From NCBI GenBank assembly GCA_977030845.1, contig OZ365114.1, positions 18,414,001 through 18,478,000 on the forward strand: a DNA stretch of 64,000 nt, given 5' to 3'. The stretch's first letter is position 1, and each line of letters starts with the position of its first letter. A model generated the notes under the pieces. The model saw nothing but the letters and a program-made list of their open reading frames with translations. It was not told the DNA's origin and did no database searches. Shown here one piece after another: positions 9,001 to 49,640 of the stretch. This stretch comes from Fimbriosthenelais zetlandica (Eukaryota). The translations under genes and the position numbers were made by a program.

Positions 9001-9484
9001 AATTTGCACCGAGCAGCCTATATCAACAATGCTATTCGTCTGACCACTCATGCCATGTTTACCACACTCAGGTCAACATCAACGTAGAATGGATGGGCGT
9101 GAGGCCTTGCATTGGATGGAAAAGATATTTATTATTTTTTTACCACTAGGCCACTCTCTTCCCTCTGACATCCCATTCCACTGACATCACATAACAGAAT
9201 CGACTGGGGTAAAAATAACGTGACCTTATTATAGATATGGATTATCAATCCTAATCAGAGAGTGCTTAGGGGATTTAGGACATAAAACTTCAGCCCGGAC
9301 GTGTTCTGGTTCGCAGGGTAAGCCCAGTTGCACCCAAGTATTTATGAGACGCGGTATAAAAAGATCTTTGGGCACCAATAATGTCCTGAGCCATACAAAA
9401 CGGTGCAGAATTCGCAACAGTTCGCCAACCTGAACAGCTACAGATACTCCAAATGTGGAGCAAAGACTGAAGACATTCAGTTTT

Positions 9485-9625
9485 ATGGAAATGAGCGAAC
9501 GAGAAATCCGGTATCAGAAACTCGAGTTTTTACTAAACAAGTGGAGCAATTACACCTCGTATATCCTGGGCCATATGGGACCTCAGAAAGAGGAAGAGAG
9601 GAAAAACGTGGAGGACAAAGTATAA
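9485..9625 (+). pseudogene. HELLS: HELLS/LSH (DDM1-family) N-terminal helix fragment, copy 1 (46-aa mini-ORF)
   Basis: Translates to MEMSEREIRYQKLEFLLNKWSNYTSYILGHMGPQKEEERKNVEDKV*. Aligns with human HELLS [35 protein letters not shown] (recalled from memory). Confidence 0.75.
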
Positions 9626-9778
9626 TATAATGTCTAAGGCTGTAGCAAAACGTGGTGGACTTGGGTAAATATAATGTGCCTTTATTATACATATGGATGC
9701 AGAAATTGCAACAGTTCGCCAACCTGAACAGCTACAGATACTCCAAATGTGGAGCAAAGTCTGAAGACAGTATGTTCT

Positions 9779-9895
9779 ATGGAAATGAGCGAACGAGAGT
9801 ATCAGAAACTCGAGTTTTTGCTAAGTAAATCGAGCGCATACACCTCGTACATCCTGGGCCATATGGAATGCCAGAAAGAGGAAGAGAGGAAATAG
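9779..9895 (+). pseudogene. HELLS: HELLS/LSH N-terminal helix fragment, copy 2 (38-aa mini-ORF)
   Basis: Translates to MEMSEREYQKLEFLLSKSSAYTSYILGHMECQKEEERK*. LLSKSSAYT..L..ME.Q.EEE.K matches the HELLS pattern [14 protein letters not shown].LEEQK. Confidence 0.78.
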
Positions 9896-10874
9896 GTGGA
9901 GATAATGTAAAAAAAAAAAGCAAATGAAAGCACTGGTGGAGGATAAAGTACCGTCTAAGGCTACAGCAACATGAAACAAATGCTTCCCCAGGTGCTAAAA
10001 TTACTTTTGACTTGGGTAAATATAATGTGACCTTATTATACATATGGATGCAGAAATCGCAACAGTTCGCCAATCTGAACAGCTACAGATACTCCAAATG
10101 TGGAGCAAAGTCTGAAGACATTAAGTTCTATGATAATGAGTGAACGAGAAATGTATCAGAAACTATACTGATATACTGCAGTAATATGATATATATGAAA
10201 TATACTGCAGTAAAATATATAATGGAAGTCAGTCTGAAGTGGCAATAATGGTAGCTAAAGATCATATGACTCAACAATGGTGCTTATGTTATAACCTTTA
10301 CCGAAATCCATGGTAACATATATCTATGTGATTAAGTTTAGTGTGAGAAAATTTGATTACATATTAGTTGGGAGTCTACTTTAAAAACTGGTTTGAGGGC
10401 AATGATAACGGGACGTCAGTTAGAACTGTAATGGATGTTTCTTGCCTTGGTAGAGTTGGTAAATCTATTATTATTCCACCACTGTATATCTAGAATAGGT
10501 ATAGTAAGTAAAGCATTGGGCAATTTCATTTTTAGTCATATATACCCCATAGATACTGCTGTTCAGTTGGTTATGTCATTTTTTAAGAAGTTACAATAAA
10601 ATAGGCCTACAGGTCATTACATTCAGGCTGAAAAAAAACACTGTAAGGCATCAGCAAGACCAACAGAGTTAGCCAACCTCAAAGCTCTTTATTCAACATC
10701 AAGCCAATTGCGAGTACAATCCAATCAACAAGCTGATTGGAAATATTTCTCTCAGCTAGAGAAGAAGAAAAAGACAAGATAGAGTCTGTGTCTTTTTTTA
10801 GCCAACTTTTACAGTCCTGGCATATTATCGACTTTGCGAGTCTGTATCTCAGCTTCTAAATGTAATGGGTTCAG

Positions 10875-11024
10875 GTCCTCAGTCCTACAGATCTCAGACA
10901 GCTACTGGACCGATCAGGGCTCCATGATGGAGAAAAGGCAGGCCTGGCAAAAAAGAAACTCGCTGCCAGTTCCGAAAAAACAGAAGGTGTGGAGGGGGTT
11001 TTTAAAGTCCTGGAAGAGGATGAT
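10875..11024 (+). pseudogene. HELLS: HELLS/LSH extreme C-terminal exon fragment, copy 1
   Basis: After a putative acceptor (gggttcag|GTC) it reads VLSPTDLRQLLDRSGLHDGEKAGLAKKKLAASSEKTEGVEGVFKVLEEDD. Compare human HELLS VISDKDLELLLDRSDL...GIFKILE (recalled from memory). The frame stays open to 11183. Confidence 0.78.
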
Positions 11025-11741
11025 ATACTGATATACTGCAGTAATATGATATATGATATATATGAAATATACTGCAGTAAAATATATAATGGAAGTCAGT
11101 CTGAAGTGGCAATAATGGTAGCTAAAGATCAGATGACTCAACAATGGTGCTTATGTTATAACCTTTACCGAAATCCATGGTAACATATATCGATGTGATT
11201 AAGTTTAGTGTGAGAAAATTTGATTACATATTAGTTGGGAGTCTACTTTAAAAACTGGTTTGAGGGCAATCATAGCGGGACGTCAGTTGGAACTGTAATG
11301 GATGTTTCTTGCCTTGGTAGAGTTGGTAAATCTATTATTATTCCTCCACTGTATATCTAGAATAGGTATAGTAAGTAAAGCATTGGGCAATTTCATTTTT
11401 AGTCATATATACCCCATAGATACTGCTGTTCAGTTGGTTATGTCATTTTTTAAGAAGTTACAATAAAATAGGCCTACAGGTCATTACATTCAGGCTGAAA
11501 AAAAACACTGTAAGGCATCAGCAAGACCAACAGAGTTAGCCAACCTCAAAGCTCTTTATTCAACATCAAGCCAATTGCGAGTACAATCCAATCAACAAGC
11601 TGATTGGAAATATTTCTCTTAGCTAGAGAAGAAGAAAAAGACAAGATAGAGTCTGTGTCTTTTTTTAGCCAACTTTTACAGTCCTGGCATATTATCGACT
11701 TTGCGAGTCTGTATCTCAGCTTCTAAATGTAATGGGTTCAG

Positions 11742-11891
11742 GTCCTCAGTCCTACAGATCTCAGACAACTACTGGACCGATCAGGGCTCCATGATGGAGA
11801 AAAGGCAGGCCTGGCAAAAAAGAAACTCGCTGCCAGTTCCGAAAAAACAGAAGGTGTGGAGGGGGTTTTTAAAGTCCTGGAAGAGGATGAT
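11742..11891 (+). pseudogene. HELLS: HELLS/LSH C-terminal exon fragment, copy 2
   Basis: Same 50-aa translation as copy 1, with a synonymous cag>caa change. The frame stays open to 12050. Confidence 0.78.
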
Positions 11892-12602
11892 ATACTGATA
11901 TACTGCAGTAATATGATATATGATATATATGAAATATACTGCAGTAAAATATATAATGGAAGTCAGTCTGAAGTGGCAATAATGGTAGCTAAAGATCAGA
12001 TGACTCAACAATGGTGCTTATGTTATAACTTTTACCAAAATCCATGGTAACATATATCGATGTGATTAAGTTTAGTGTGAGAAAATTTGATTACATATTA
12101 GTTGGGAGTCTACTTTAAAAACTGGTTTGAGGGCAATGATAACGGGACGTCAGTTGGAACTGTAATGGATGTTTCTTGCCTTGGTAGAGTTGGTAAATCT
12201 ATTATTATTCCACCACTGTATATCTAGAATAGGTATAGTAAGTAAAGCATTGGGCAATTTCATTTTTATATACCCCATAGATACTGCTGTTCAGTTGGTT
12301 ATGTCATTTTTTAAGAAGTTACAATAAAATAGGCCTACAGGTCATTACATTCAGGCTGAAAAAAAACACTGTAAGGCATCAGCAAGACCAACAGAGTTAG
12401 CCAACCTCAAAGCTCTTTATTCAACATCAAGCCAATTGCGAGTACAATCCAATCAACAAGCTGATTGGAAATATTTCTCTTAGCTAGAGAAGAAGAAAAA
12501 GACAAGATAGAGTCTGTGTCTTTTTTTAGCCAACTTTTACAGTCCTGGCATATTATCGACTTTGCGAGTCTGTATCTCAGCTTCTAAATGTAATGGGTTC
12601 AG

Positions 12603-12752
12603 GTCCTCAGTCCTACAGATCTCAGACAACTACTGGACCGATCAGGGCTCCATGATGGAGAAAAGGCAGGCCTGGCAAAAAAGAAACTCGCTGCCAGTTC
12701 CGAAAAAACAGAAGGTGTGGAGGGGGTTTTTAAAGTCCTGGAAGAGGATGAT
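12603..12752 (+). pseudogene. HELLS: HELLS/LSH C-terminal exon fragment, copy 3
   Basis: Same 50-aa translation. The frame stays open to 12902, with an in-frame 9-nt deletion downstream of EEDD. Confidence 0.78.
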
Positions 12753-13554
12753 ATACTGATATACTGCAGTAATATGATATATGATATATACTGCAGTAAA
12801 ATATATAATGGAAGTCAGTCTGAAGTGGCAATAATGGTAGCTAAAGATCAGATGACTCAACAATGGTGCTTATGTTATAACTTTTACCGAAATCCATGGT
12901 AACATATATCGATGTGATTAAGTTTAGTGTGAGAAAATTTGATTACATATTAGTTGGGAGTCTACTTTAAAAACTGGTTTGAGGGCAATGATAACGGGAC
13001 GTCAGTTGGAACTGTAATGGATGTTTCTTGCCTTGGTAGAGTTGGTAAATCTATTATTATTCCACCACTGTATATCTAGAATAGGTATAGTAAGTAAAGC
13101 ATTGGGCAATTTCATTTTTATATACCCCATAGATACTGCTGTTCAGTTGGTTATGTCATTTTTTAAGAAGTTACAATAAAATAGGCCTACAGGTCATTAC
13201 ATTCAGGCTGAAAAAAAACACTGTAAGGCATCAGCAAGACCAACAGAGTTAGCCAACCTCAAAGCTCTTTATTCAACATCAAGCCAATTGCGAGTACAAT
13301 CCAATCAACAAGCTGATTGGAAATATTTCTCTCAGCTAGAGGCTGACGGAGTAGATGGAGGTGGGCGGGGAGACCTTGAGCAGGAGCCGGTTGTAAGCAA
13401 AAATACTGAATTGTTAAATTTTCTTGAAAATTATATTCTAAGTTTACATTACTTTTACGTCTCAAATGCCCCATCTTTCGCGAAATTTCCCATAAATTTC
13501 CATATTATCGACTTTGCGAGTCTGTATCTCAGCTTCTAAATGTAATGGGTTCAG

Positions 13555-13704
13555 GTCCTCAGTCCTACAGATCTCCGACAGCTACTGGACCGATCAGGGC
13601 TCCATGATGGAGAAAAGGCAGGCCTGGCAAAAAAGAAACTCGCTGCCAGTTCCGAAAAAACAGAAGGTGTGAAGGGGGTTTTTAAAGTCCTGGAAGAGGA
13701 TGAT
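13555..13704 (+). pseudogene. HELLS: HELLS/LSH C-terminal exon fragment, copy 4
   Basis: Same translation except E40K, plus a synonymous aga>cga change. Preceded by a longer AT-rich intron-like stretch (about 13408-13554). The frame stays open to 13863. Confidence 0.76.
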
Positions 13705-14159
13705 ATAATGATATACTGCAGTAATATGATATATGATATATATGAAATATACTGCAGTAAAATATATAATGGAAGTCAGTCTGAAGTGGCAATAATGGTA
13801 GCTAAAGATCAGATGACTCAACAATGGTGCTTATGTTATAACCTTTACCGAAATCCATGGTAACATATATCGATGTGATTAAGTTTAGTGTGAGAAAATT
13901 TGATTACATATTAGTTGGGAGTCTACTTTAAAAACCGGTTTGAGGGCAATGATAACGGGACGTCAGTTGGAACTGTAATGGATGTTTCTTGCCTTGGTAG
14001 AGTTGGTAAATCTATTATTATTCCACCACTGTATATCTAGAATAGGTATAGTAAGTAAAGCATTGGGCAATTTCATTTTTAGTCATATATACCCCATAGA
14101 TACTGCTGTTCAGTTGGTTATGTCATTTTTTAAGAAGTTACAATAAAATAGGCCTACAG

Positions 14160-14450
14160 GTCATTACATTCAGGCTGAAAAAAAACACTGTAAGGCATCA
14201 GCAAGACCAACAGAGTTAGCCAACCTCAAAGCTCTTTATTCAACATCAAGCCAATTGCGAGTACAATCCAATCAACAAGCTGATTGGAAATATTTCTCTC
14301 AGCTAGAGGCTGACGGAGTAGATGGAGGTGGGCGGGGAGACCTTGAGCAGGAGTCGGTTGTAAGCAATATTTAGTGTGGAGAAGGCAGCTGTGTAGGTAG
14401 ACACTGACCCATGGCCTTACTTGACCTGATGGATGAAGCACAACCATCTG
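14160..14450 (-). mobile_element. Eroded L1/Tx1-like LINE reverse transcriptase remnant; part of it is co-amplified in every array unit
   Basis: Minus strand reads WVSVYLHSCLLHTKY..AQGLPAHLHLLRQPLAERNISNQLVDWIVL, then (frameshift) NSVGLADALQCFF. This resembles RQGxPLSPxLFxxxxEPLAxxI and YADD. Confidence 0.45.
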
Positions 14451-20337: not shown

Positions 20338-21020
20338 AATTGGCACTTCATACTATAGGGACCACCTAAATGTAAATGGCACTAAATTTGCCCACCTTAA
20401 CACATGTAATGACGACATTGAGGCACAATGGTTGGTATACAAACACAACCATCTCAAATCTTTGCTCATTGGAAACATATACCGACCACCTGCTGGTAAC
20501 CTAGGTAACATGTTAGATTACCTCACCAACACATTAGAACAAATTGATTGATTGATTGAATGGAGTTTAACGTCACTTTCAAAAAATGTTCAGTTATATC
20601 ATGACGGTGCCTACTTGTGACAGTGAGCCCAATGCTCTTTTATAGTGCTGCCTCACTGAGGTATCATGTCGCAGGCACATGACATGATATCTCACCCAGT
20701 CATATTATACTGACACCGGGTTGACCAGTCCTAGCACTTTCCTCTTTTTGCTGAGTGCCAAAAAAAGGTAAAACTACTAGGGACCCAGACCACTGGTCAT
20801 TGGGAGAGCCATCAGACACAGAGCAAATAATACTGTTAAACAAGCCAGAGCAGAAAGCAGACAATCCGAAAAAATTCTGGAGACAGGTAAACGACATTCT
20901 TGGCATGGGCAAGACCAATCACAAATTCACACTTGAAGATGATTCTGGGGAAGAAATACCACCGGAAAAAACGGCAGAATTCACAAATGACTATTTTGCC
21001 ACAATAGGGCTGAATAGCTG
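20338..21020 (+). mobile_element. CR1/L2-group LINE ORF2 fragment (APE endonuclease and EN-RT linker), interrupted by a SINE
   Basis: Reads IGTSYYRD..DIEAQWLVYKHNHLKSLLIGNIYRPPAGNLGNMLDYLTNTLEQID (IYRPP motif). After the SINE it reads NPKKFWRQVNDILG..TAEFTNDYFATIG. Confidence 0.78.
20544..20780 (-). mobile_element. 5'-truncated SINE with (TCAA)n tail and a Meta-like central domain
   Basis: A (TGAT)n run lies at the left edge. The internal CACCCAGTCATATTATACTGACACCGGGTTGACCAGTCCTAGCACT matches my recollection of a conserved invertebrate SINE core. The tRNA head is absent and no TSD was seen. Confidence 0.6.
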
Positions 21021-24000
21021 AAACCGCTGGATAAATATCCTAAATAAAAAAAAACAGGCTTCTCTCATAGTTAAGGTCACGTTTGTAGATATGTTGCCCT
21101 TAATCAATAACAGGAAGGATACAATTTTGGCCTGCATGATAAATCATACTCCTTGAATAACAAACCAAGGTCTTAGCTAAGATGCAGTTTCTATACCGAG
21201 TATTATTGTGATTATAGCAGGCTTTAGTCACAAGACGATAAAGTGAATCAAATGCTTAACGGTACATGGGAAGCCAATATCTGCAACTTTTATTCCGAGA
21301 GAGATAGAGCTTTGCCATCGAGCCTCGTTAACATTTCACAAGTCAGGCCTCTGCGCCGTTGGTGGTGTACCCTAGCAAGCACTTCTTTTCCCATCCATAC
21401 AAATCAAGACGAGCAAAAATTGCAGCTTTATGGCCAATTATCGTCCAGGTAGGCACTCGGAGGCGGTCGGAGGTCCACCCTCTCTGTCTGCTTGTCATTG
21501 ATCCAGAGGCTTGGGATTACCATGGTAACAGCAAACCCCTCTGTATCAATAGAAATGCCAGGCCATCAGCACGAGGGATGGCTTTACCATTGATACAAGA
21601 CCTTTATGGGAAACAAGAGGGCCCATCGTCTGACGCTCACAAGAAAGCTGACCACACTAAAAGCACCAAGTTTCCCATTTAACTCTTCCACTATGGAGCA
21701 ATATATACAGAGCCGGCAAAGGGAGGCATTATTAGACTGGAAGTGGGGTGTCTCTATCGTGTCTATCCCAAATCAAGACCGCCACGTCTTTACACCCACC
21801 ACTCATTCAATATTGGCCACCAATGGTCAGGGCCAGTTCTATGGCCAAATTTCCAAACAGGACTTTGTGTGAGGTACGACGATCTATTGGGTGTTATTTA
21901 GGCAGGCGTGTATGGGTAGGCTCAGTGCACACAAGTTCCTTTAGATTGGCCTGCATTCAATCACTCTCTGCAAAGTGGGCTTCTCTGCCTTAACCGCCCC
22001 CAGACCTGTCCAGCTATGAGGACACCGCCTTTCACTTGGAGAGGTCCGTTGTGAAAAGCCAACAGAGGTCTGTAGCCTAGCTTTTGCTGAAATGACACCT
22101 CAGATAAACTCAAAGACCTGTAGAGGACAGAAGAGCCAATACTGGAGGGTTGAAAACCCTGTCAGAGTGCCGACTCTCAACCCTGCAGGGTCAACGCCTC
22201 CTGTTGCACGGAAGGCTGGAGAAGGGGATGAATTCTGTCCTTCCACAAAGGTTCGCGCCTTGACTTTTCAGTCATTTCTTCACAGAAAGCTGTGAGGCAA
22301 CGAATACAGAAGTGAAGCCGAAAAATAAACAGATAACGTCCCCAGGGAGTGAGGGTATGAGAAAATATGGGAACAAACAGAGATGCCTGAGGCATGGTAC
22401 CATTTACGTACACTGCTTACAATTCAAAAATAGCGTTGGGAAATCTAGGACTGTATGGTCAAAAGAAATATTGTCCTTGACTCACCTCACCCAGAAGATT
22501 TATAATGTGGATCGATATATACGTACCTGAAAGAAGAAAATAAAAAATATAAGAATATGCAACACTGACATATATGACTAGGATCTACTGATATTACATT
22601 AGACTACAAATTTCTATACATGCTATTGTATTGTCATATGCTTTAAAATCAACCAAAGAACATTGTAAGAAGATTGTAATAAAATATAGCGTGGTTATCA
22701 TTACTACATCAAAGACTATACTTCGTTAAAAGTTTTAGAGTGTGTAAGCCAGCATCGAATACTTCCAATATCATCCTTTCGTCGTTATCTTTTTGGGTCA
22801 TCCGCTCCTCCTGTCCTTTAAGAGTAATATGAAGTACAACGCTTTATGGATCTCATGTTTATTAGATAACATCTTGATGGGCTATTTTTCTTTAATCAAG
22901 GAAGCAATGACATAGGGGCCAAGGGCTTGGTATTTACGTCCTCTTATCAGTGAGAGATAATAGGGCTAGGAGTCATTTTATCCTCATATAAGGCGATAAA
23001 TGGTCATTATGGAAGCACTCCGCATTAAAAGTGCAGAGCATTTACAAAGGCCTAGAGCTAATTTCACTGGGACAACATGCTACATAGATAAGGCCTAAAC
23101 TTGGCTTTCTAGACTCGGGGCACGGGATAGTTGATCTCGATATTATGAGAATTTAAATAATCATTACGTCATAGATTACTAAAGAGATACGAGAAAAATT
23201 TGCAGAGTCAACATAGCCTAGAGGGCGCTGAGGGAGAAGCCCACGCCCCTTTTTTCCCCCATCTTGTCAAAGTCTGTCCCCAGCCTTATCCATGTTGCAG
23301 TCTGCTCATATCAAATAAGCTGACCTTTTACATTGGGCTTTGAAGTTGGGATAAAAAGTGATAAAAGATGGGCCGGGGCCAGTGAGGCCTCCGTGATGAA
23401 ACCTTTGTAGGAAGGATGGAGTTGTGAGACTATCATTAAAACCAGGAAGCTTAAAAACTACTCCGGCGAGCAGATCAGAGATACCTGGCATCCGAGGGAA
23501 TCTTCGTAGCTGGTTTTCAGAAAGACCTCGAAAAAAGACTTCCCACCAACCCATCACAGCAGCCAAGATATGTAGCTATTGCCATGGCCTAAGTGGTCCC
23601 CAGGTAAATTAAGTATCATCCATTTATCAAATTTTCACTGCAGCAACACTTCTTGGCTTTAATCTTGGCTATGGAAATTGGCCGGAAATAAGGGGCTGCA
23701 TATGTAATAGAGGTGCCATCACCTTTCATCCATTAGCAAATGCAGGCTCCTACTAAAAAAGGGGAAAAGATTAAAGGTAAATTTTGATATAGAAGGGAAG
23801 TGAGGTATTTAGTGGTGCATTAAAATAGGGTGGAGTATAAAGTAAGTGGTTGGAGAGGTAATTCATGGCGGATTAATCGATTCACATGCCATTGAATGGT
23901 GTCAGGAGCTGCATGAACGCCAAATCCAGGCGCCTCCAGCTAGATAGCTAATCTTAATATTTAATCCGCTGAAAAACCGTGGAGGATGTCCGTGATCCAC

Positions 24001-28249: not shown

Positions 28250-29300
28250 TCCACATCATTAGCGCCTGTCTGACGCTTCTAATAGAAGAATCAGCATATT
28301 GCCGACGCTAGTGTGAATGGCAGCCACGAGTGGCTCAAAAACAGTTGATGACCCACAATAAAGATACGGGTGGTTACAGCAGCAAATTGCATTTGACAGT
28401 CCAGCCAGTTTTCTCTCGATCTCATAATTACTCTTCCAAAATCTAGGTGTTTTGTAAGTGAAAACGTTCAGTGGTTGCTCCCATTGCATATCAAAGATGA
28501 ATCAGAGATGTTTTTCGAATAGTGGTGAGAGGGCTTTGGGAAGTTTTACTTCTGTTAGGACTGTAGTCACCAAGTCGAGTCGGGATATCTGTAATCAATG
28601 CCTCCATTTCTCCAAAAGGCTCACCATGACAAAAGGTCAGTAGAGTAGGGGGTTTTGTCCCATATAATATGGCAAACCCAACAGTGTTCCCTTTGGGTAT
28701 GAGCAGAAAAACACCATGAGAATAAAGAGGCCTTTGACACTGGAGATAATAGGCTTTAGTATACTCTCATATGACCAACGTGGGAAGGCCTGTTTTGTAG
28801 CACATAGACCTATATAGTGAAGAATCTCAGTAACCACAAACAATTCAATAGGCTGGATTCGTCCTCATCCATAGTTGTTCATGGTAGTGACGATATTGTG
28901 TTGTAGAATCACCCTATGGATACCAGTATGACAGAGGATTTTACTTAAGGGAGAAGGGCAGGAAGTGGATATGAAGAGGGCCAAGTCACTTGCGACCTGT
29001 CGTTATAGGGTCATAATTCCACTCTGAGGCTCACTCAATGGACCCAATAAAACCTTCTCTCAGGCTCTGCTATATGGGCCATTTGAGGATGGTCCCCAAA
29101 ATCAGAGTCACAAGGGCCCTTTAGAACAGAGCTGAGGCATGTTAACATTGATATAGCCCCAGCCAAACACATCGAAATTTGTTGAATGCATATCCTTAAC
29201 AGAAACGTTTTCCCAGTTTTGAATTGCATCTTTGAGAAGAGAAAAGATTGATAGAGGCCAAGAGTATAGCAATTTGTTGAGAACAGAAAAAGTGTGTTCT
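28250..29300 (-). mobile_element. Eroded RTE-like LINE reverse transcriptase remnant
   Basis: Colinear traces: SSVLKGPCDSDF (KxKGD..CxNYR), KQAFPRWSYESIL (KAFDxV), GLPYYMGQNPLLY (GxPQG..LSPLLF), LNVFTYK..EIERKLAGLSNA (VxxFxYLG..EIxxRIxxAxxA). Confidence 0.45.
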
Positions 29301-33050: not shown

Positions 33051-33248
33051 CCTGTAGTATAACAAGAGCGAGAGGTGGCTGCGATTTTTCGCAGAAGATA
33101 TGATCGCAGGAAAAATGCTGCGAAAAGTTCAGCGAGCGCTAGCTGGCCTGGCAGCTAACGAAAACGCTTCCTGCGAAAAATGCTGCGATTGAACTCCAGC
33201 GAGGAGATCTGCGAGGTGAACATCAGCGAGTGAACATCAGATATGATA

Positions 33249-33400
33249 TCTCAGATATGGTTATCTCAGATATGGTTATCTCAGATATGGTTATCTCAGA
33301 TATGGTTATCTCAGATATGGTTATCTCAGATATGGTTATCTCAGATATGGTTATCTCAGATATGGTTATCTCAGATATGATATCTGAGATATGGTAACAT
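33249..33400 (+). repeat. 15-bp tandem array (TCTCAGATATGGTTA), 8 perfect copies plus degenerate flanks; left subterminal array
   Basis: Read directly from the sequence. Confidence 0.97.
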
Positions 33401-33930
33401 CAGCGAGCGGATGCTTCGAAATCGCTGTTGCTATGGAAAATTTCGCTGTTGCTATGAACAAATTCGCTGCTGCTATGGAAACAGCGAGTGTGCCTTTGCT
33501 TCCCGCCTTTTCACAAGGTTTTCTCACAGAGATTTTCGCAGCGTCCCCTCGCTGAAGATATGATATCAGAAGATATGTTAACATCAGCTAGAGGAACATC
33601 AGATATGTTAACTCTCGATATGGCTGAGGCGGCCTCCTCTCGCTGTTTCCATAGCTGCAGCGAATTTTCGCTGTAGCCATGGAAACAGCGAGCGCACTGG
33701 GGCCAGTAACCTGTCCCTTGGTTCCCGCCCTATAGGCCTATAAAAACGGTATAGGACATTTCCCTTTTGGTTTAACAATTAGCCTAAGTTATCTGCTTCA
33801 TGTCTAGGCCTAGGCCTAATAGGCTATAGGCCTAATGATATTAGGCCTATTAGCCTAGCCTAACCAGATAGCCTAGTTATGACCGTCCCATCGGTGTGGT
33901 AGTCATGAGAAGAGGGGAGGGTTCTAAGCC

Positions 33931-34376
33931 TATAGCCCGGCCTAATCTTCTACGCCTAGACTATCTTTCAGGGATACAAGCTGAGGACAGTGGTGTGGCC
34001 TAAGCTACAATTTCAAATAGGCCTAGGCCTAGGGCCTACCCTAATGCATAGGCCTAGATGTAGGCCTAGGCCCTAACTGTTAGTCTAAGGTTATAGGCCT
34101 ACAATGGCCAGATGACCAGTACAAAATGCCATCTCTAAAATCAGTTAGAGGCCTATAACTATAACTAGGCCTAATAAACTATAGCCCGGCCTAATAGGCC
34201 TCTTCTACGCCTAGACTATCTTCCAGAGATAGGCCTACAAGCTGAGGACAGGGGTGTGGCCTAAGCTACAATTTCAAATAGGCCTAGGCCTAGGACCTAC
34301 CCTAATGCATAGGCCTAGGCCTACATAGGCCTAGGCTCTAACTGTTAGTCTCAGGTTATAGGCCTACAATGGCCAG
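33931..34376 (+). repeat. Internal direct duplication (about 180-195 bp, two copies) saturated with TAGGCCTA motifs
   Basis: tatagcccggcctaat..caatggccaga occurs at about 33931-34112 and 34180-34376. Confidence 0.93.
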
Positions 34377-34385
34377 AATAACATG

Positions 34386-35507
34386 GGGCTCGTTTCACAA
34401 TTAAGGACAGTGTCGTTCACTAGAGTTAAGGACACTTTGCATTACATAATTAAGGACAGCCATCGCTAAGATAACCATTAAGGACAGAGGGTTAAGGACA
34501 ATATGTCCTAATGTCACTACAAACGTTGGATTTTAAGGACAGCCCCTAAGGTCGTCCTTAAAATATCCAGTGTTATTTTGGTAGTCTTTAAGCATTTTAA
34601 TTTGTATAAATTAGGATAAAATGTGTCTACAAGTGGAATTTGGGTCAATATCATTTACCCTATTGCGTTATCAGACAAATCCTTTACATGTTTATGGTAT
34701 AAAATTAAGCTGAAACTTAGCACCTTTTCACCACATTTTCATCGAGTCTGCACTGTCCTTAAGCCTGTCGTTAAGTTAAGGACAGGCACCTGTCCGGCTG
34801 TCGGGGCGGGAAGTTATATCAAACCTTAGATCATCATGGAGTGTATGGTTAGACTGAGGAGAGTGTATAGACAGAGGGTGGATCCTGTTGTAATTTTTAA
34901 TCGGGGAGGAATTATGTTGGGAGGTTTCGGAGAGTCCTTAGATGGCCTATAAGTTATAATATCGGAGAGATTTTGGCGTACGCCACAGGCACAGTCACTG
35001 TCACTGTCACTGAGTCAGTGGAGAGGCTTTCCCAAAATTACGATTTTAGAGGCAAAATTTATAAGAAATATTCAACATACCTAGGCTATTTTCACCCCAG
35101 TCGATGGATCATTCCATGTTTCATACTTAAGGAATAAACTATAACAGAAATGCGACCACAAATAATGCAGGAGTTGTCTGCTCCGACTTACGACGTGAAC
35201 TAAGTCTGACGTCAACCAGTCACGTCATGTAGCCAAGGCTCCTTGAAGTAGGCAAGGCTCCTTGACGTATCTAAGCGTATCCACGTTACATCCGCCCACG
35301 GGGCGCCTTATTGTCATGGATAGGGGGTCTCTAGGAAGGATCGCTAACATTACTAGTGAACGACAGTGCTATTAACGATCCTACATTATGAAACGAGTTA
35401 ATGCAATTATCACTAAAATTGGGAAAATCGTTCATTAACTGAAATAAGGATGTGTCCTTAATTAAGGACAATAACAAGGATTTCGTCCTTAATTGTGAAA
35501 CGAGCCC
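34386..35507 (+). mobile_element. PIF/Harbinger deletion derivative nested in the larger TIR element, 3-bp TSD ATG
   Basis: TIRs GGGCTCGTTTCACAATTAAGGAC / GTCCTTAATTGTGAAACGAGCCC, flanked by ATG on both sides. Many TTAAGGAC subterminal motifs. A remnant RLRRVYRQRVDP..F..GRFR near 34850-34940 resembles the Harbinger transposase N-terminus. Confidence 0.87.
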
Positions 35508-35686
35508 ATGATTAACTAAAATCAGTTAGAGAGCAGCGAGCGGACGCTTCATAATCGCTGTTGCTATGGAAAATGTCGCTGTTGCTATGAAAAATTTCGC
35601 TGCTGCTATGGAAACAGCGAATGTGCCTTTGGTTCCCGCCTTTTCACAAGGTTTCACACAGAGATTTTCGCAGCGTCCCCTCGCTG

Positions 35687-35763
35687 ATGTTACCATATCT
35701 CAGATAACCATATCTCAGATAACCATATCTCAGATAACCATATCTCAGATAACCATATCTCAG
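35687..35763 (-). repeat. 15-bp tandem array (ACCATATCTCAGATA), about 5 copies; right subterminal array, inverted relative to the left one
   Basis: Read directly from the sequence. The innermost unit is the exact reverse complement of 33381-33400. Confidence 0.96.
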
Positions 35764-37006
35764 CGAGAGGAGGCTGCGAATTTTCGCAGCCCACTGCTCG
35801 CAGCGTCTGATCGCTGAGGGGCGTTTCGTTAACTCCAGCGATGCGAGGGATGTTATGCAAGCGGGAGCCATCTAGCGCTCGCTGAACTTATCGCAGGACT
35901 TGGGCTGCGATCATATCTTCTGCGAAAATTCGCAGCCTCCTCTCGCTCTTGTTATACTACAGGCCCATTGTGTGATAAGCTGCAGCATTTTCCACAGTCA
36001 AACCCCTGGACGGGATATTTCTGGCTCGCTCAAATAATGAGACTGCGCCACAAGTCACTCTGCTTCAAAGTGGTGGAGGAAAGGTTTTTTAAACGAGTCC
36101 ATTTCCTCCAGTGGCATGTCTTCACGTCCCGGTTAAAGTTCATTTAAGAAAGAAAAAGCTGGAGGCCACGGGAAAAATGAACCAATTACAAGTGTGAAAC
36201 TCGCGAGACATGCTTTAAAAGTTCTCCCAACTTCCAGCTCTCTTCAGTTCTGACATAACGGATCCGCGCTCCGCTTCCCCCCTCTTATTCTCGGTGGAAG
36301 TCAATGACAAGTCAATGGCGAACACTTGTGTATAAGCATGGGCCAATGTTTATACCAGCAGTGGGTAGGCCATTAACGTGCTGATCTTGTTGAGTTTATT
36401 TAAGAGCAACTCTCGCAGCAATATCCTGACTCTGAGCTAATTGATGTGAAGGGAGCAACTGGCCAGAAGAGCAGAAGAGGGAGGGAGATGGTTTGTGCTT
36501 GGGAGGCTGTAAACATGCCCCCCACACTGCAATCATTTAACTCAACCTTACATAGCCAGCCTTGGTGGTGGTTAGACACTCGAAATATATTCACCGATTG
36601 CTTCCATGAAAATGCGATGGATAAATGTAGTGCTTTCTTTTAGTTACCAAGAGAATTTTGGTGGCGAGCAAACGGTCCAGTCAATAAAGGAGGTACTTTA
36701 CTCTGCCAAAATTTCCTTTTCCTCATTCGTAAACTTATGGAAATTCAGTAGGGTATATACTAAAGTGAGTACACAACAAAACACATAAAACCCAGTCCAC
36801 TCAGGGGCCTAGCACTGAGCTTGGCAAATATCAATAGGCCACTCAGTCCGCCTCAAACAATGCTCCCGAGTACAAGATTACAGACAGATAGGTGTACTTA
36901 GATCAAATGTTTCTTCCAGGGGAGGTTGGATGGATGTATATATGTATGGTGAATTGTATACGGATGAAGATAAATATTTGTCTGTATAGAGTCTATAGTA
37001 GACTAA

Positions 37007-49202: not shown

Positions 49203-49590
49203 GGTTCAGTTGTGATTGGTTAAATCTCACAGAGCGGGAAAAATTTCGCGCGTAGACGGTTCAGTTGCGATTGGCTGAATCTCACAGAGCGGGAAATATT
49301 TCGCGCGGAGGCAGTTCAGTTGTGATTGGTTGAATCTCACAGAGCGGGAAAAATTTCGCGCGGAGACAGTTCACTTGTGATTGGTTGAATCTCACAGAGC
49401 GGGAACAATTTCGCGCGGAGACAGTTCAGTTTTGATTGGCTGAATCTCACAGAGCGGGAAAAACTTTCGTGCGGAGACAGTTCACTGCTGATTGGAAGAA
49501 TCTCACAGAGCGGGAACAAATTCGCGCGAAGACAGTTCAGTGCTGATTGGCTGAATCTCACAGAGCGCGAAAAACTTTCGCGCGGAGACA
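49203..49590 (+). repeat. 55-bp tandem array, 7 copies, CpG-rich
   Basis: The consensus agttcagttgtgattggttgaatctcacagagcgggaaaaatttcgcgcggagac recurs at about 49203, 49258, 49313, 49368, 49423, 49479 and 49534. Confidence 0.97.
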
Positions 49591-49640
49591 GGAGGCGCAT
49601 GCGTAGGCGAACTGTCGCGGCACATGGCGTCAGATTTGAA
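49203..49640 (+). promoter_or_regulatory. Cell-cycle-promoter-like motif cluster (CCAAT and E2F x7, NRF1, YY1/ATG, CHR)
   Basis: Each unit has ATTGG, GCGGGAA (GCGCGAA in the last unit) and TTCGCGC (TTCGTGC in one). GGCGCATGCGTA follows at about 49594, cacATGGCG at 49621 and TTTGAA at 49635. Motif matches only; no activity evidence. Confidence 0.4.

What the first reader, a model, noticed from the sequence alone, without database searches (positions are those of the whole stretch)
9202..14367. A HELLS/LSH (DDM1) gene apparently stripped of its helicase core, with only its two termini amplified in tandem inside a transposon graveyard
Seen in sequence: three copies of an exon encoding EIRYQKLEFLL.KS..YTSYILGHM..QKEEERK lie directly upstream of four copies of an exon encoding VLSPTDLRQLLDRSGL...GVFKVLEEDD, all on the + strand. 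N-terminal copy 3 is fused at 10163/10164 to the tail of the C-terminal exon. I found no SNF2 motif (DEMGLGKT, DEGH, TGTPLQN) in the window. Established knowledge: these two peptides resemble the N-terminal helix and the extreme C-terminus of HELLS/LSH/DDM1, the remodeller needed for DNA methylation and silencing of repeats. Inference: a host anti-transposon gene was captured, internally deleted and recently amplified among TE remnants. It could supply small RNAs that tune HELLS, or helicase-less peptides that interfere with it. The N and C matches are independent and point to the same gene, which argues against chance.
Basis: partly seen in the sequence, partly recalled or inferred. Interest (0 to 1): 0.88.

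Follow-up and report, generated by a model that had tools for sequence, protein, structure and literature searches.

The report
Broken, core-less HELLS gene relic
This stretch of what earlier scan notes call an annelid genome holds only the two ends of the chromatin remodeller gene HELLS, each copied in tandem, with the motor domain deleted, and it looks like a decaying pseudogene rather than a working regulator.

Summary
Positions 9202-10163 carry two full copies and one truncated copy of an exon whose peptide matches the CC2 helix of human HELLS (residues 60-98). Positions 10164-14367 carry four copies of an exon matching the last 47 residues of HELLS, inside five near-identical (98-100%) copies of a roughly 600-nt 3' block.

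Both matches beat 20,000 shuffles, and the cross-controls are null. Four 70-residue blocks of the HELLS ATPase core find nothing in the 64 kb, so the motor really is missing here.

The signs point to decay rather than function:
- N1 and N2 differ as neutral DNA would (3 synonymous changes, 10 non-synonymous; the coding part is no better kept than the flank).
- N2 ends in a stop, and N3 is a 34-nt stub fused at 10163/10164 to the tail of the last exon.
- All last-exon copies share an 8-nt duplication that removes the expected stop.
- No hairpin, antisense copy or transposon termini were found.

No sequencing run was listed, so expression is untested. The best reading is an internally deleted, non-processed HELLS pseudogene whose ends were amplified by local tandem duplication. 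Transposon capture and a regulatory role are unsupported. I could not search the rest of the genome, so I cannot say whether an intact HELLS exists elsewhere. Interest is low.

The parts
9202..9657 (+). N unit 1: shared 41-nt head (9202-9242), a roughly 150-nt insert absent from N2 and N3 (9243-9392), a conserved upstream stretch, and an exon-like ORF at 9485-9625 (46 aa, MEMSEREIRYQKLEF...) that matches HELLS CC2. This is the best-preserved copy and keeps EIRY as in human HELLS.
9658..10008 (+). N unit 2: the same exon at 9779-9895 (38 aa), with an in-frame 6-nt deletion and a TAG directly after EEERK. It extends further 3' than N1.
10009..10163 (+). N unit 3: truncated. Only 34 nt of coding sequence remain (10130-10163). 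It ends at the deletion junction 10163/10164.
10164..10761 (+). First copy of the 3' block, joined directly to N3: the tail of the last exon (from the last base of the EEDD codons), a 3'UTR-like sequence with AATAAA about 440 nt downstream, and sequence up to ...AGCTAGAG. Four further copies lie at 11024-11628, 11891-12489, 12752-13341 and 13704-14308.
10762..12752 (+). Three type-1 units (867, 867 and 861 nt). Each holds a 59-nt filler of unknown origin (10762-10820, 11629-11687, 12490-12548), the last 54 nt of an intron ending in ttcag, a last-exon copy (10875-11024, 11742-11891, 12603-12752) and the 3' block.
13342..13704 (+). Type-2 junction and fourth last-exon copy. 13342-13392 is an open 51-nt stretch ending in a GTAAGC donor, read here as the 3' part of the upstream exon. 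That reading rests on frame and splice signals only; similarity to human HELLS is nil. 13393-13554 is a 162-nt GT..AG intron. 13555-13704 is the last exon.
14309..14367 (+). Truncated second type-2 junction: the same 51-nt exon-like stretch plus gtaagcaa. The array ends at 14367/14368.
11022..11044 (+). 8-nt tandem duplication (GATATACT twice) directly after EEDD, present in all copies including the one fused to N3. With two copies the frame stays open for 55 more codons. With one copy the reading would be ...EEDDILQ followed by TAA. This is inferred to be a shared frameshifting lesion that predates the amplification.
   Evidence: direct reading

Best explanation
This is a non-processed, internally deleted HELLS pseudogene. 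It may be a dead duplicate, or it may be the dead original; which one is not known.

Shown:
- Genomic pieces from the two ends of one HELLS gene lie in gene order on one strand.
- The 3' pieces still carry an intron.
- The ATPase core is absent.
- A stub of the CC2 exon is joined to the last bases of the coding sequence.

Inferred order of events:
1. An old local triplication of the CC2 exon with its short flanks, after which the copies drifted neutrally.
2. An 8-nt slippage duplication that destroyed the stop codon.
3. A recent tandem amplification of the 3' end (part of the upstream exon, intron, last exon, 3'UTR) by unequal exchange or replication template switching. This produced two junction types.
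4. A deletion from the third CC2 copy to the tail of the first last-exon copy, which removed the whole core. A second break cut the right end of the array.

Nothing indicates that the locus makes a functional product.
For: - HELLS origin of both ends. Human residues 60-98 form the CC2 helix of the autoinhibitory coiled coil (PMC12885070).
- Core absent, although it is far better conserved than the ends that are detected.
- Intron retained upstream of every last-exon copy (ttcag acceptor; a full 162-nt GT..AG intron in unit 4). So this is not a retrocopy.
- Junction 10163/10164 joins the N exon to the last-exon tail.
- Neutral drift of the N copies. N1 and N2 differ at 13 of 114 coding positions against about 7 of 81 upstream. 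Three changes are synonymous and ten are non-synonymous, spread over five codons plus a stop codon in N2 (counted).
- The stop-destroying 8-nt duplication is shared by all copies.
- Copy-specific indels and two junction types argue that these are real, distinct copies.
- No short predicted protein in the 5.8-billion-protein collection shares words with either peptide.
Against: - The parent gene, or an intact HELLS elsewhere in this genome, could not be looked for.
- Expression could not be tested; no run was listed.
- N1 and N2 both keep an ATG-started open frame, and the three indels among the N copies are all multiples of three. This is a weak, post hoc hint of past coding constraint.
- The 55-codon open extension after EEDD in AT-rich DNA is somewhat unexpected by chance (about 0.02 by my estimate).
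- The order of events is inference only.
Confidence: 0.7

Rival explanations
1. Transposon-carried cargo. A Helitron-, Pack- or CACTA-like element picked up the two ends of HELLS and amplified them.
For: Gene fragments that keep intron sequence and lie in the same orientation are typical of DNA-transposon capture (general knowledge). The region is gene-poor, with no ORF above 154 aa. The copies in both arrays share the same start but have variable ends.
Against: No terminal inverted repeats flank or bound the arrays. The unit ends show no TC...CTRR-type termini in a consistent position (reading). There is no other copy in 64 kb and no transposon protein domain in the ten longest ORFs. The copies are strictly tandem, not dispersed.
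Confidence: 0.12
2. A functional derivative. The locus would express CC2-only microproteins or an N+C mini-HELLS that interferes with HELLS-CDCA7, or it would be a small-RNA source that tunes HELLS.
For: N1 and N2 start with ATG and cover the helix that contacts ATPase lobe 1, whose surface CDCA7 is proposed to compete for. Candidate donors after N1 (AAC|GTGGAG and AAA|GTATAA) are phase 0, which is compatible with the phase-0 acceptors of the 3' exons (reading). Transposon-borne fragments of silencing genes that make regulatory RNAs have a precedent: rice miR820 and DRM2 (my own knowledge).
Against: The N copies diverge neutrally. N2 is cut by a stop, and N3 lacks the conserved IRY. The last-exon copies run on into 55 codons of AT-rich, low-complexity sequence. 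There is no inverted or antisense copy and no stable fold. No Rfam match was found. No relative was found in the protein collections.
Confidence: 0.06
3. Part of a live HELLS gene. For example, N1 could be a genuine first coding exon with the core exons beyond the window, or these could be alternative exon cassettes of the kind earlier notes report for this genome.
For: Earlier notes on this genome describe many tandem alternative exons. N1 is well preserved (EIRY, LL, Y, M, EE as in human).
Against: The N array abuts the C array with no room for a core. No core block is found in the 50 kb downstream or the 9 kb upstream. The N3/last-exon-tail junction is a deletion scar. N2 and N3 are defective, and the last-exon copies lack a stop.
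Confidence: 0.07
4. Assembly artefact: a collapsed, expanded or mis-joined repeat.
For: Near-identical tandem units are hard to assemble. The copy number is non-integer (about 4.75 units), and the right end is abrupt.
Against: The units differ by private substitutions and indels: a 6-nt deletion shared by units 3 and 4, a 9-nt deletion in unit 4, a 7-nt deletion in unit 1, and two junction types. Assembler loops do not usually produce such differences.
Confidence: 0.05

Closest known systems
Non-processed (duplicated or unitary) pseudogenes and gene relics with internal deletions
   Same: Homology to a parent gene, retained intron, large internal deletion, premature stop and frameshift, neutral divergence of copies.
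   Different: Both surviving ends have been amplified in local tandem arrays, and the parent is a genome-defence remodeller. Whether an intact parent still exists is unknown.
HELLS / LSH / DDM1 subfamily of SNF2 ATPases
   Same: The N peptide aligns to human HELLS 62-98 (16 of 37 identical), which is the CC2 helix. The C peptide aligns to 791-831 (about 40% identical, with one 11-residue insertion).
   Different: No ATPase lobe 1 or 2, no CC1, and no intact reading frame. It is derived from the family but is not a member in any functional sense.
Transposon-captured fragments of host silencing genes (rice CACTA-borne miR820 against DRM2; Pack-MULE and Helitron cargo). Cited from my own knowledge.
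   Same: Fragments of a gene that silences repeats, copied outside their gene context.
   Different: No transposon termini, no hairpin or miRNA-like fold, and copies that are tandem rather than dispersed. No small-RNA evidence.
Tandem gene-derived small-RNA loci such as Drosophila Su(Ste). Cited from my own knowledge.
   Same: A tandem array of fragments homologous to a protein-coding gene.
   Different: Su(Ste) yields antisense transcripts and piRNAs. Here all copies are in sense orientation and no RNA data exist.

Membership tests
HELLS/LSH/DDM1 (functional SNF2 remodeller) | SNF2 ATPase lobe 1 (motifs I-III: GLGKT, DEGH, TGTPLQN) | tested here: not met
   The regex scan is empty. Human blocks 213-283 and 348-416, verified, give no hit better than E 0.12.
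HELLS/LSH/DDM1 (functional SNF2 remodeller) | ATPase lobe 2 (motifs IV-VI: FSQ, DWNP, QAQDRCHRIGQ) | tested here: not met
   Blocks 597-666 and 667-737, verified, give no hit better than E 1.4. The only trace is an isolated exact CCNHPYL at 28361-28381 on the minus strand, with no flanking similarity.
HELLS/LSH/DDM1 (functional SNF2 remodeller) | N-terminal coiled coil (CC2 helix) similarity | tested here: met
   The role of CC2 is described in PMC12885070.
HELLS/LSH/DDM1 (functional SNF2 remodeller) | C-terminal tail similarity (DL..LLDRS.L ... G.FK.LE) | tested here: met
   phmmer alone did not find it in the PDB or in 1.84 billion representatives.
Non-processed pseudogene / gene relic | Retains intron sequence of the parent, so it is not a retrocopy | tested here: met
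   54 nt of intron with a ttcag acceptor lie upstream of all four last-exon copies. Unit 4 has a full 162-nt GT..AG intron.
Non-processed pseudogene / gene relic | Disabling lesions | tested here: met
   Core deletion with junction 10163/10164; TAG in N2; N3 truncated; an 8-nt duplication removing the inferred stop in all last-exon copies.
Non-processed pseudogene / gene relic | Neutral sequence evolution | tested here: met
   N1 and N2 differ by 11.4% in the coding part against 8.6% upstream, with 3 synonymous and 10 non-synonymous changes. The numbers are small.
Non-processed pseudogene / gene relic | No functional transcript | not testable with these tools
   No sequencing run was listed.
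Transposon-captured gene fragment | Element termini (TIRs, or Helitron 5'-TC / CTRR-3' with hairpin) and target-site features bounding the cargo | tested here: not met
   No inverted repeat of 18 nt or more spans or flanks 9.2-14.4 kb. No consistent termini are seen on direct reading.
Transposon-captured gene fragment | Dispersed copies in the genome | not testable with these tools
   None within the window. The rest of the genome could not be searched.
Small-RNA source locus (hairpin or dual-strand) | Inverted or antisense copies, or a stable fold | tested here: not met
   All copies are on the + strand. The fold z-score is -0.39. No Rfam family matched.

The most novel reading that the evidence does not exclude
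The core-less locus is expressed. It would act on the intact HELLS-CDCA7 machine either through CC2-helix microproteins (N1, N2, or an N+C mini-protein) or as a sense template for small RNAs against HELLS. That would make it a self-made brake on the remodeller that keeps repeats methylated.
Probability: 0.04. Interest if true: 0.75.

Novelty: new member of a known kind. Interest (0 to 1): 0.2.

Why it matters
As it stands this is an annotation point: a HELLS-derived pseudogene that should not be called as a gene, and whose ATG-started mini-ORFs should not be taken for microproteins without RNA evidence.

It would matter more in two cases. First, if a whole-genome search showed that this is the only HELLS locus, the annelid would have recently lost a remodeller that usually travels with CDCA7 and DNMT1 (PMC10538959). 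Second, if the locus proved to be expressed, it would offer a natural CC2-only fragment for testing HELLS autoinhibition.

Tried and rejected
1. phmmer of the C peptide against 1.84 billion representatives returned only bacterial repeat proteins, by chance. A 50-residue query cannot reach significance at that database size.

2. The C peptide alone, and joined to the upstream exon-like piece, gave no PDB hit. Its homology showed only in the directed comparison.

3. Pfam has no model for these regions. The protein atlas search was uninformative.

4. All three word-indexed protein searches found no candidate. The length filter excludes full-length HELLS, so I never obtained an annelid HELLS sequence.

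5. Two metagenome scans gave nothing for C and one false positive for N. That hit, L001, is a bacterial contig where the match lies antisense to a 433-aa ORF.

6. For a time I read the 600-nt block as an intron upstream of a penultimate exon, with the EEDD|TATACTG point as a repeat junction. I dropped this reading because it needs the same breakpoint to be used five times. Reading the block as the native exon tail plus 3'UTR needs only one deletion junction, and the 8-nt duplication then explains the missing stop.

7. The exon-like 51-57 nt at 13336-13392 shows no similarity to human HELLS. It remains a guess based on splice signals and frame.

8. The CCAAT/E2F-like array at 49.2 kb was tested as a possible true HELLS promoter. 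No HELLS exon lies downstream or upstream of it.

9. The CCNHPYL hit was tested as a relic of the core. Nothing beyond the 7-mer aligns.
Full report
**What is in the sequence**

The region 9202-14367 consists of two adjoining same-strand tandem arrays.

The first array has three units starting at 9202, 9658 and 10009.
- All three begin with the same 41-nt head.
- They share a well-conserved stretch of about 90 nt followed by an ATG-started exon-like frame.
- Unit 1 carries an extra insert of about 150 nt (9243-9392).
- Unit 2 extends furthest 3'.
- Unit 3 stops after 34 coding nucleotides, at 10163.
- Identities among the units are 75-94%.

The second array runs 10164-14367. It holds five copies of a block of about 600 nt and four copies of a 150-nt coding stretch, each preceded by 54 nt ending in a ttcag acceptor. 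Identities are 98.1-100%. No other copy of either unit exists in the 64 kb. Private indels and two kinds of unit junction distinguish the copies, which argues against an assembler loop.

**Are the peptides HELLS?**

Yes, for both ends.
- The N peptide (9485-9622) has human lymphoid-specific helicase, residues 60-98, as its best hit among 177,635 PDB sequences. The E-value is only 0.13.
- The C peptide found nothing with phmmer, either in the PDB or among 1.84 billion representatives, where only bacterial repeat proteins appeared.
- I therefore had the PDB tool print human HELLS 737-838 verbatim and compared directly.
- BLASTP of the C peptide against 792-838 gives E 4e-6 with 19 of 47 identities and one 11-residue insertion.
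- Smith-Waterman scores are 75 for N1 and N2 against residues 60-98, and 62 for C against 737-838. None of 20,000 composition-preserving shuffles reaches these scores. The crossed controls (N against the C-terminus, C against the N-terminus) sit at the shuffle mean.
- Within the window, tblastn gives E 2e-6 for N and 2e-3 for C, and nothing else comes close.
- According to the 2025 cryo-EM study, residues about 62-100 form the CC2 helix of the autoinhibitory coiled coil. This helix packs on ATPase lobe 1, and CDCA7 is proposed to compete for its surface (PMC12885070).

**Is the core missing?**

Exact-motif scans find none of the SNF2 signatures.

As a stronger test I verified four 70-residue blocks of the human ATPase core against the PDB entry (213-283, 348-416, 597-666 and 667-737) and ran them against the window. 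The best hit was E 0.12. These blocks are far better conserved across animals than the two ends that are readily detected, so even a moderately decayed core would have shown.

The single oddity is an exact CCNHPYL at 28361-28381 on the minus strand (E 0.004). Nothing around it aligns to HELLS or scores in Pfam, and its PDB hits are at E 0.5 or worse. I leave it as unexplained and possibly chance.

**Anatomy of the 3' array and the junction**

After the EEDD codons the frame stays open for 55 more codons of AT-rich, low-complexity sequence. This is not how HELLS ends; the human protein has 11 residues after the LE of FKILE.

The sequence directly after EEDD contains GATATACT twice in tandem. 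With one copy the reading would be EEDDILQ followed by TAA (reading). I infer a slippage duplication that destroyed the stop. It is present in every copy, including the one fused to N3, so it predates the amplification.

On this reading the 600-nt block is the native exon tail plus 3'UTR, with an AATAAA about 440 nt downstream. The point EEDD|TATACTG is then ordinary sequence, and only 10163/10164 is a rearrangement scar.

The real unit junctions lie after ...AGCTAGAG and come in two types:
- Three units continue with a 59-nt filler of unknown origin.
- Two units continue with a 51-nt open stretch ending in a GTAAGC donor. In unit 4 this is followed by a full 162-nt GT..AG intron that is in phase with the last exon.

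The 51-nt stretch is probably the 3' part of the upstream exon. It has no measurable similarity to human HELLS, so this stays a guess.

The array ends abruptly at 14367, 8 nt into that intron.

**Function or decay?**

The evidence points to decay.
- N1 and N2 differ at 13 of 114 aligned coding positions and at about 7 of 81 upstream positions.
- Three of the coding changes are synonymous. Ten are non-synonymous, clustered in five codons.
- N2 has a TAG after EEERK.
- N3 has lost the conserved IRY and is truncated.
- All copies are in sense orientation, and no inverted repeat of 18 nt or more exists in 5-19 kb.
- The N array does not fold better than shuffles (z -0.39).
- Rfam and tRNA scans are empty.
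- No short predicted protein in the 5.8-billion-protein collection shares words with either peptide.

Two weak points run the other way. N1 and N2 both keep an ATG-started frame, and the indels among the N copies are all multiples of three. The long open extension after EEDD is also a little unlikely by chance. Expression could not be examined, because no run was listed for either query.

**Transposon capture?**

I found nothing for it.
- There are no bounding inverted repeats.
- No consistent Helitron-like ends appear on direct reading.
- The ten longest ORFs of the window carry no transposon protein domain.
- An RT-like ORF noted by eye at 20755-21021 has no Pfam hit or homologue.
- The window contains few dispersed repeats.

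The window is certainly gene-poor, since no ORF exceeds 154 aa. 'Transposon graveyard' is nevertheless not something I could confirm.

**Verdict**

This is an internally deleted, non-processed HELLS pseudogene whose two ends were amplified by local tandem duplication. The N-array duplication is old and the C-array amplification is recent.

Earlier notes of this scan call the genome an annelid and report many tandem alternative exons in it. That possibility does not fit here, because the arrays abut each other, two of the three N copies are defective, and all last-exon copies lack a stop.

I could not search the rest of the genome. The one question that could raise the interest therefore stays open: whether an intact HELLS survives elsewhere, or whether this is the dying original.

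Noticed in passing
window 49204-49660: Seven tandem 55-nt units, each with an inverted CCAAT box (GATTGG) and a TTTCGCGCG E2F-like site. They are followed by GCGCATGCG, ATGGCG and TTTGAA, so this looks like a cell-cycle promoter array. I tested whether it could be the true HELLS promoter and found no HELLS exon on either side. Already noted by the scan as s1-223669.
   Followed up: partly
window 28262-28501 (-): An 80-codon open frame contains an exact CCNHPYL, the SNF2 signature just after lobe 1 (tblastn E 0.004). Nothing else in the frame aligns to HELLS, and Pfam and PDB searches are not significant. It could be a lone relic of the deleted core or a chance match.
   Followed up: yes
window 33051-35963: A composite repeat: inverted copies (33051-33428 against 35658-35963, 73-90%) and a direct copy (33401-33567 against 35534-35699, 92%), built around 15-nt microsatellites (TCAGATATGGTTATC about 10.7 times, and its complement 4.8 times) and 21-nt repeats.
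   Followed up: no
window 9243-9392: An insert of about 150 nt is present only in N unit 1, between the 41-nt head and the conserved upstream stretch. It is either a small insertion in N1 or a deletion shared by N2 and N3. No tRNA or Rfam match.
   Followed up: partly
window 11038-11090 and the equivalent positions in the other units: The motif ATATACTGCAGTAA recurs about 36 nt apart within an AT-rich, microsatellite-like stretch. The units differ here by 7-nt and 9-nt indels, so this is a slippage-prone spot next to the 8-nt duplication.
   Followed up: partly
window 20755-21021: An 88-aa ORF (…KKFWRQVNDILG…) looks by eye like the start of a LINE reverse-transcriptase ORF. No Pfam hit and no homologue were found.
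   Followed up: partly
L001 298-384: The only metagenome 'relative' of the N peptide lies on a bacterial contig, antisense to a 433-aa ORF. It is a false positive of the pattern scan.
   Followed up: yes
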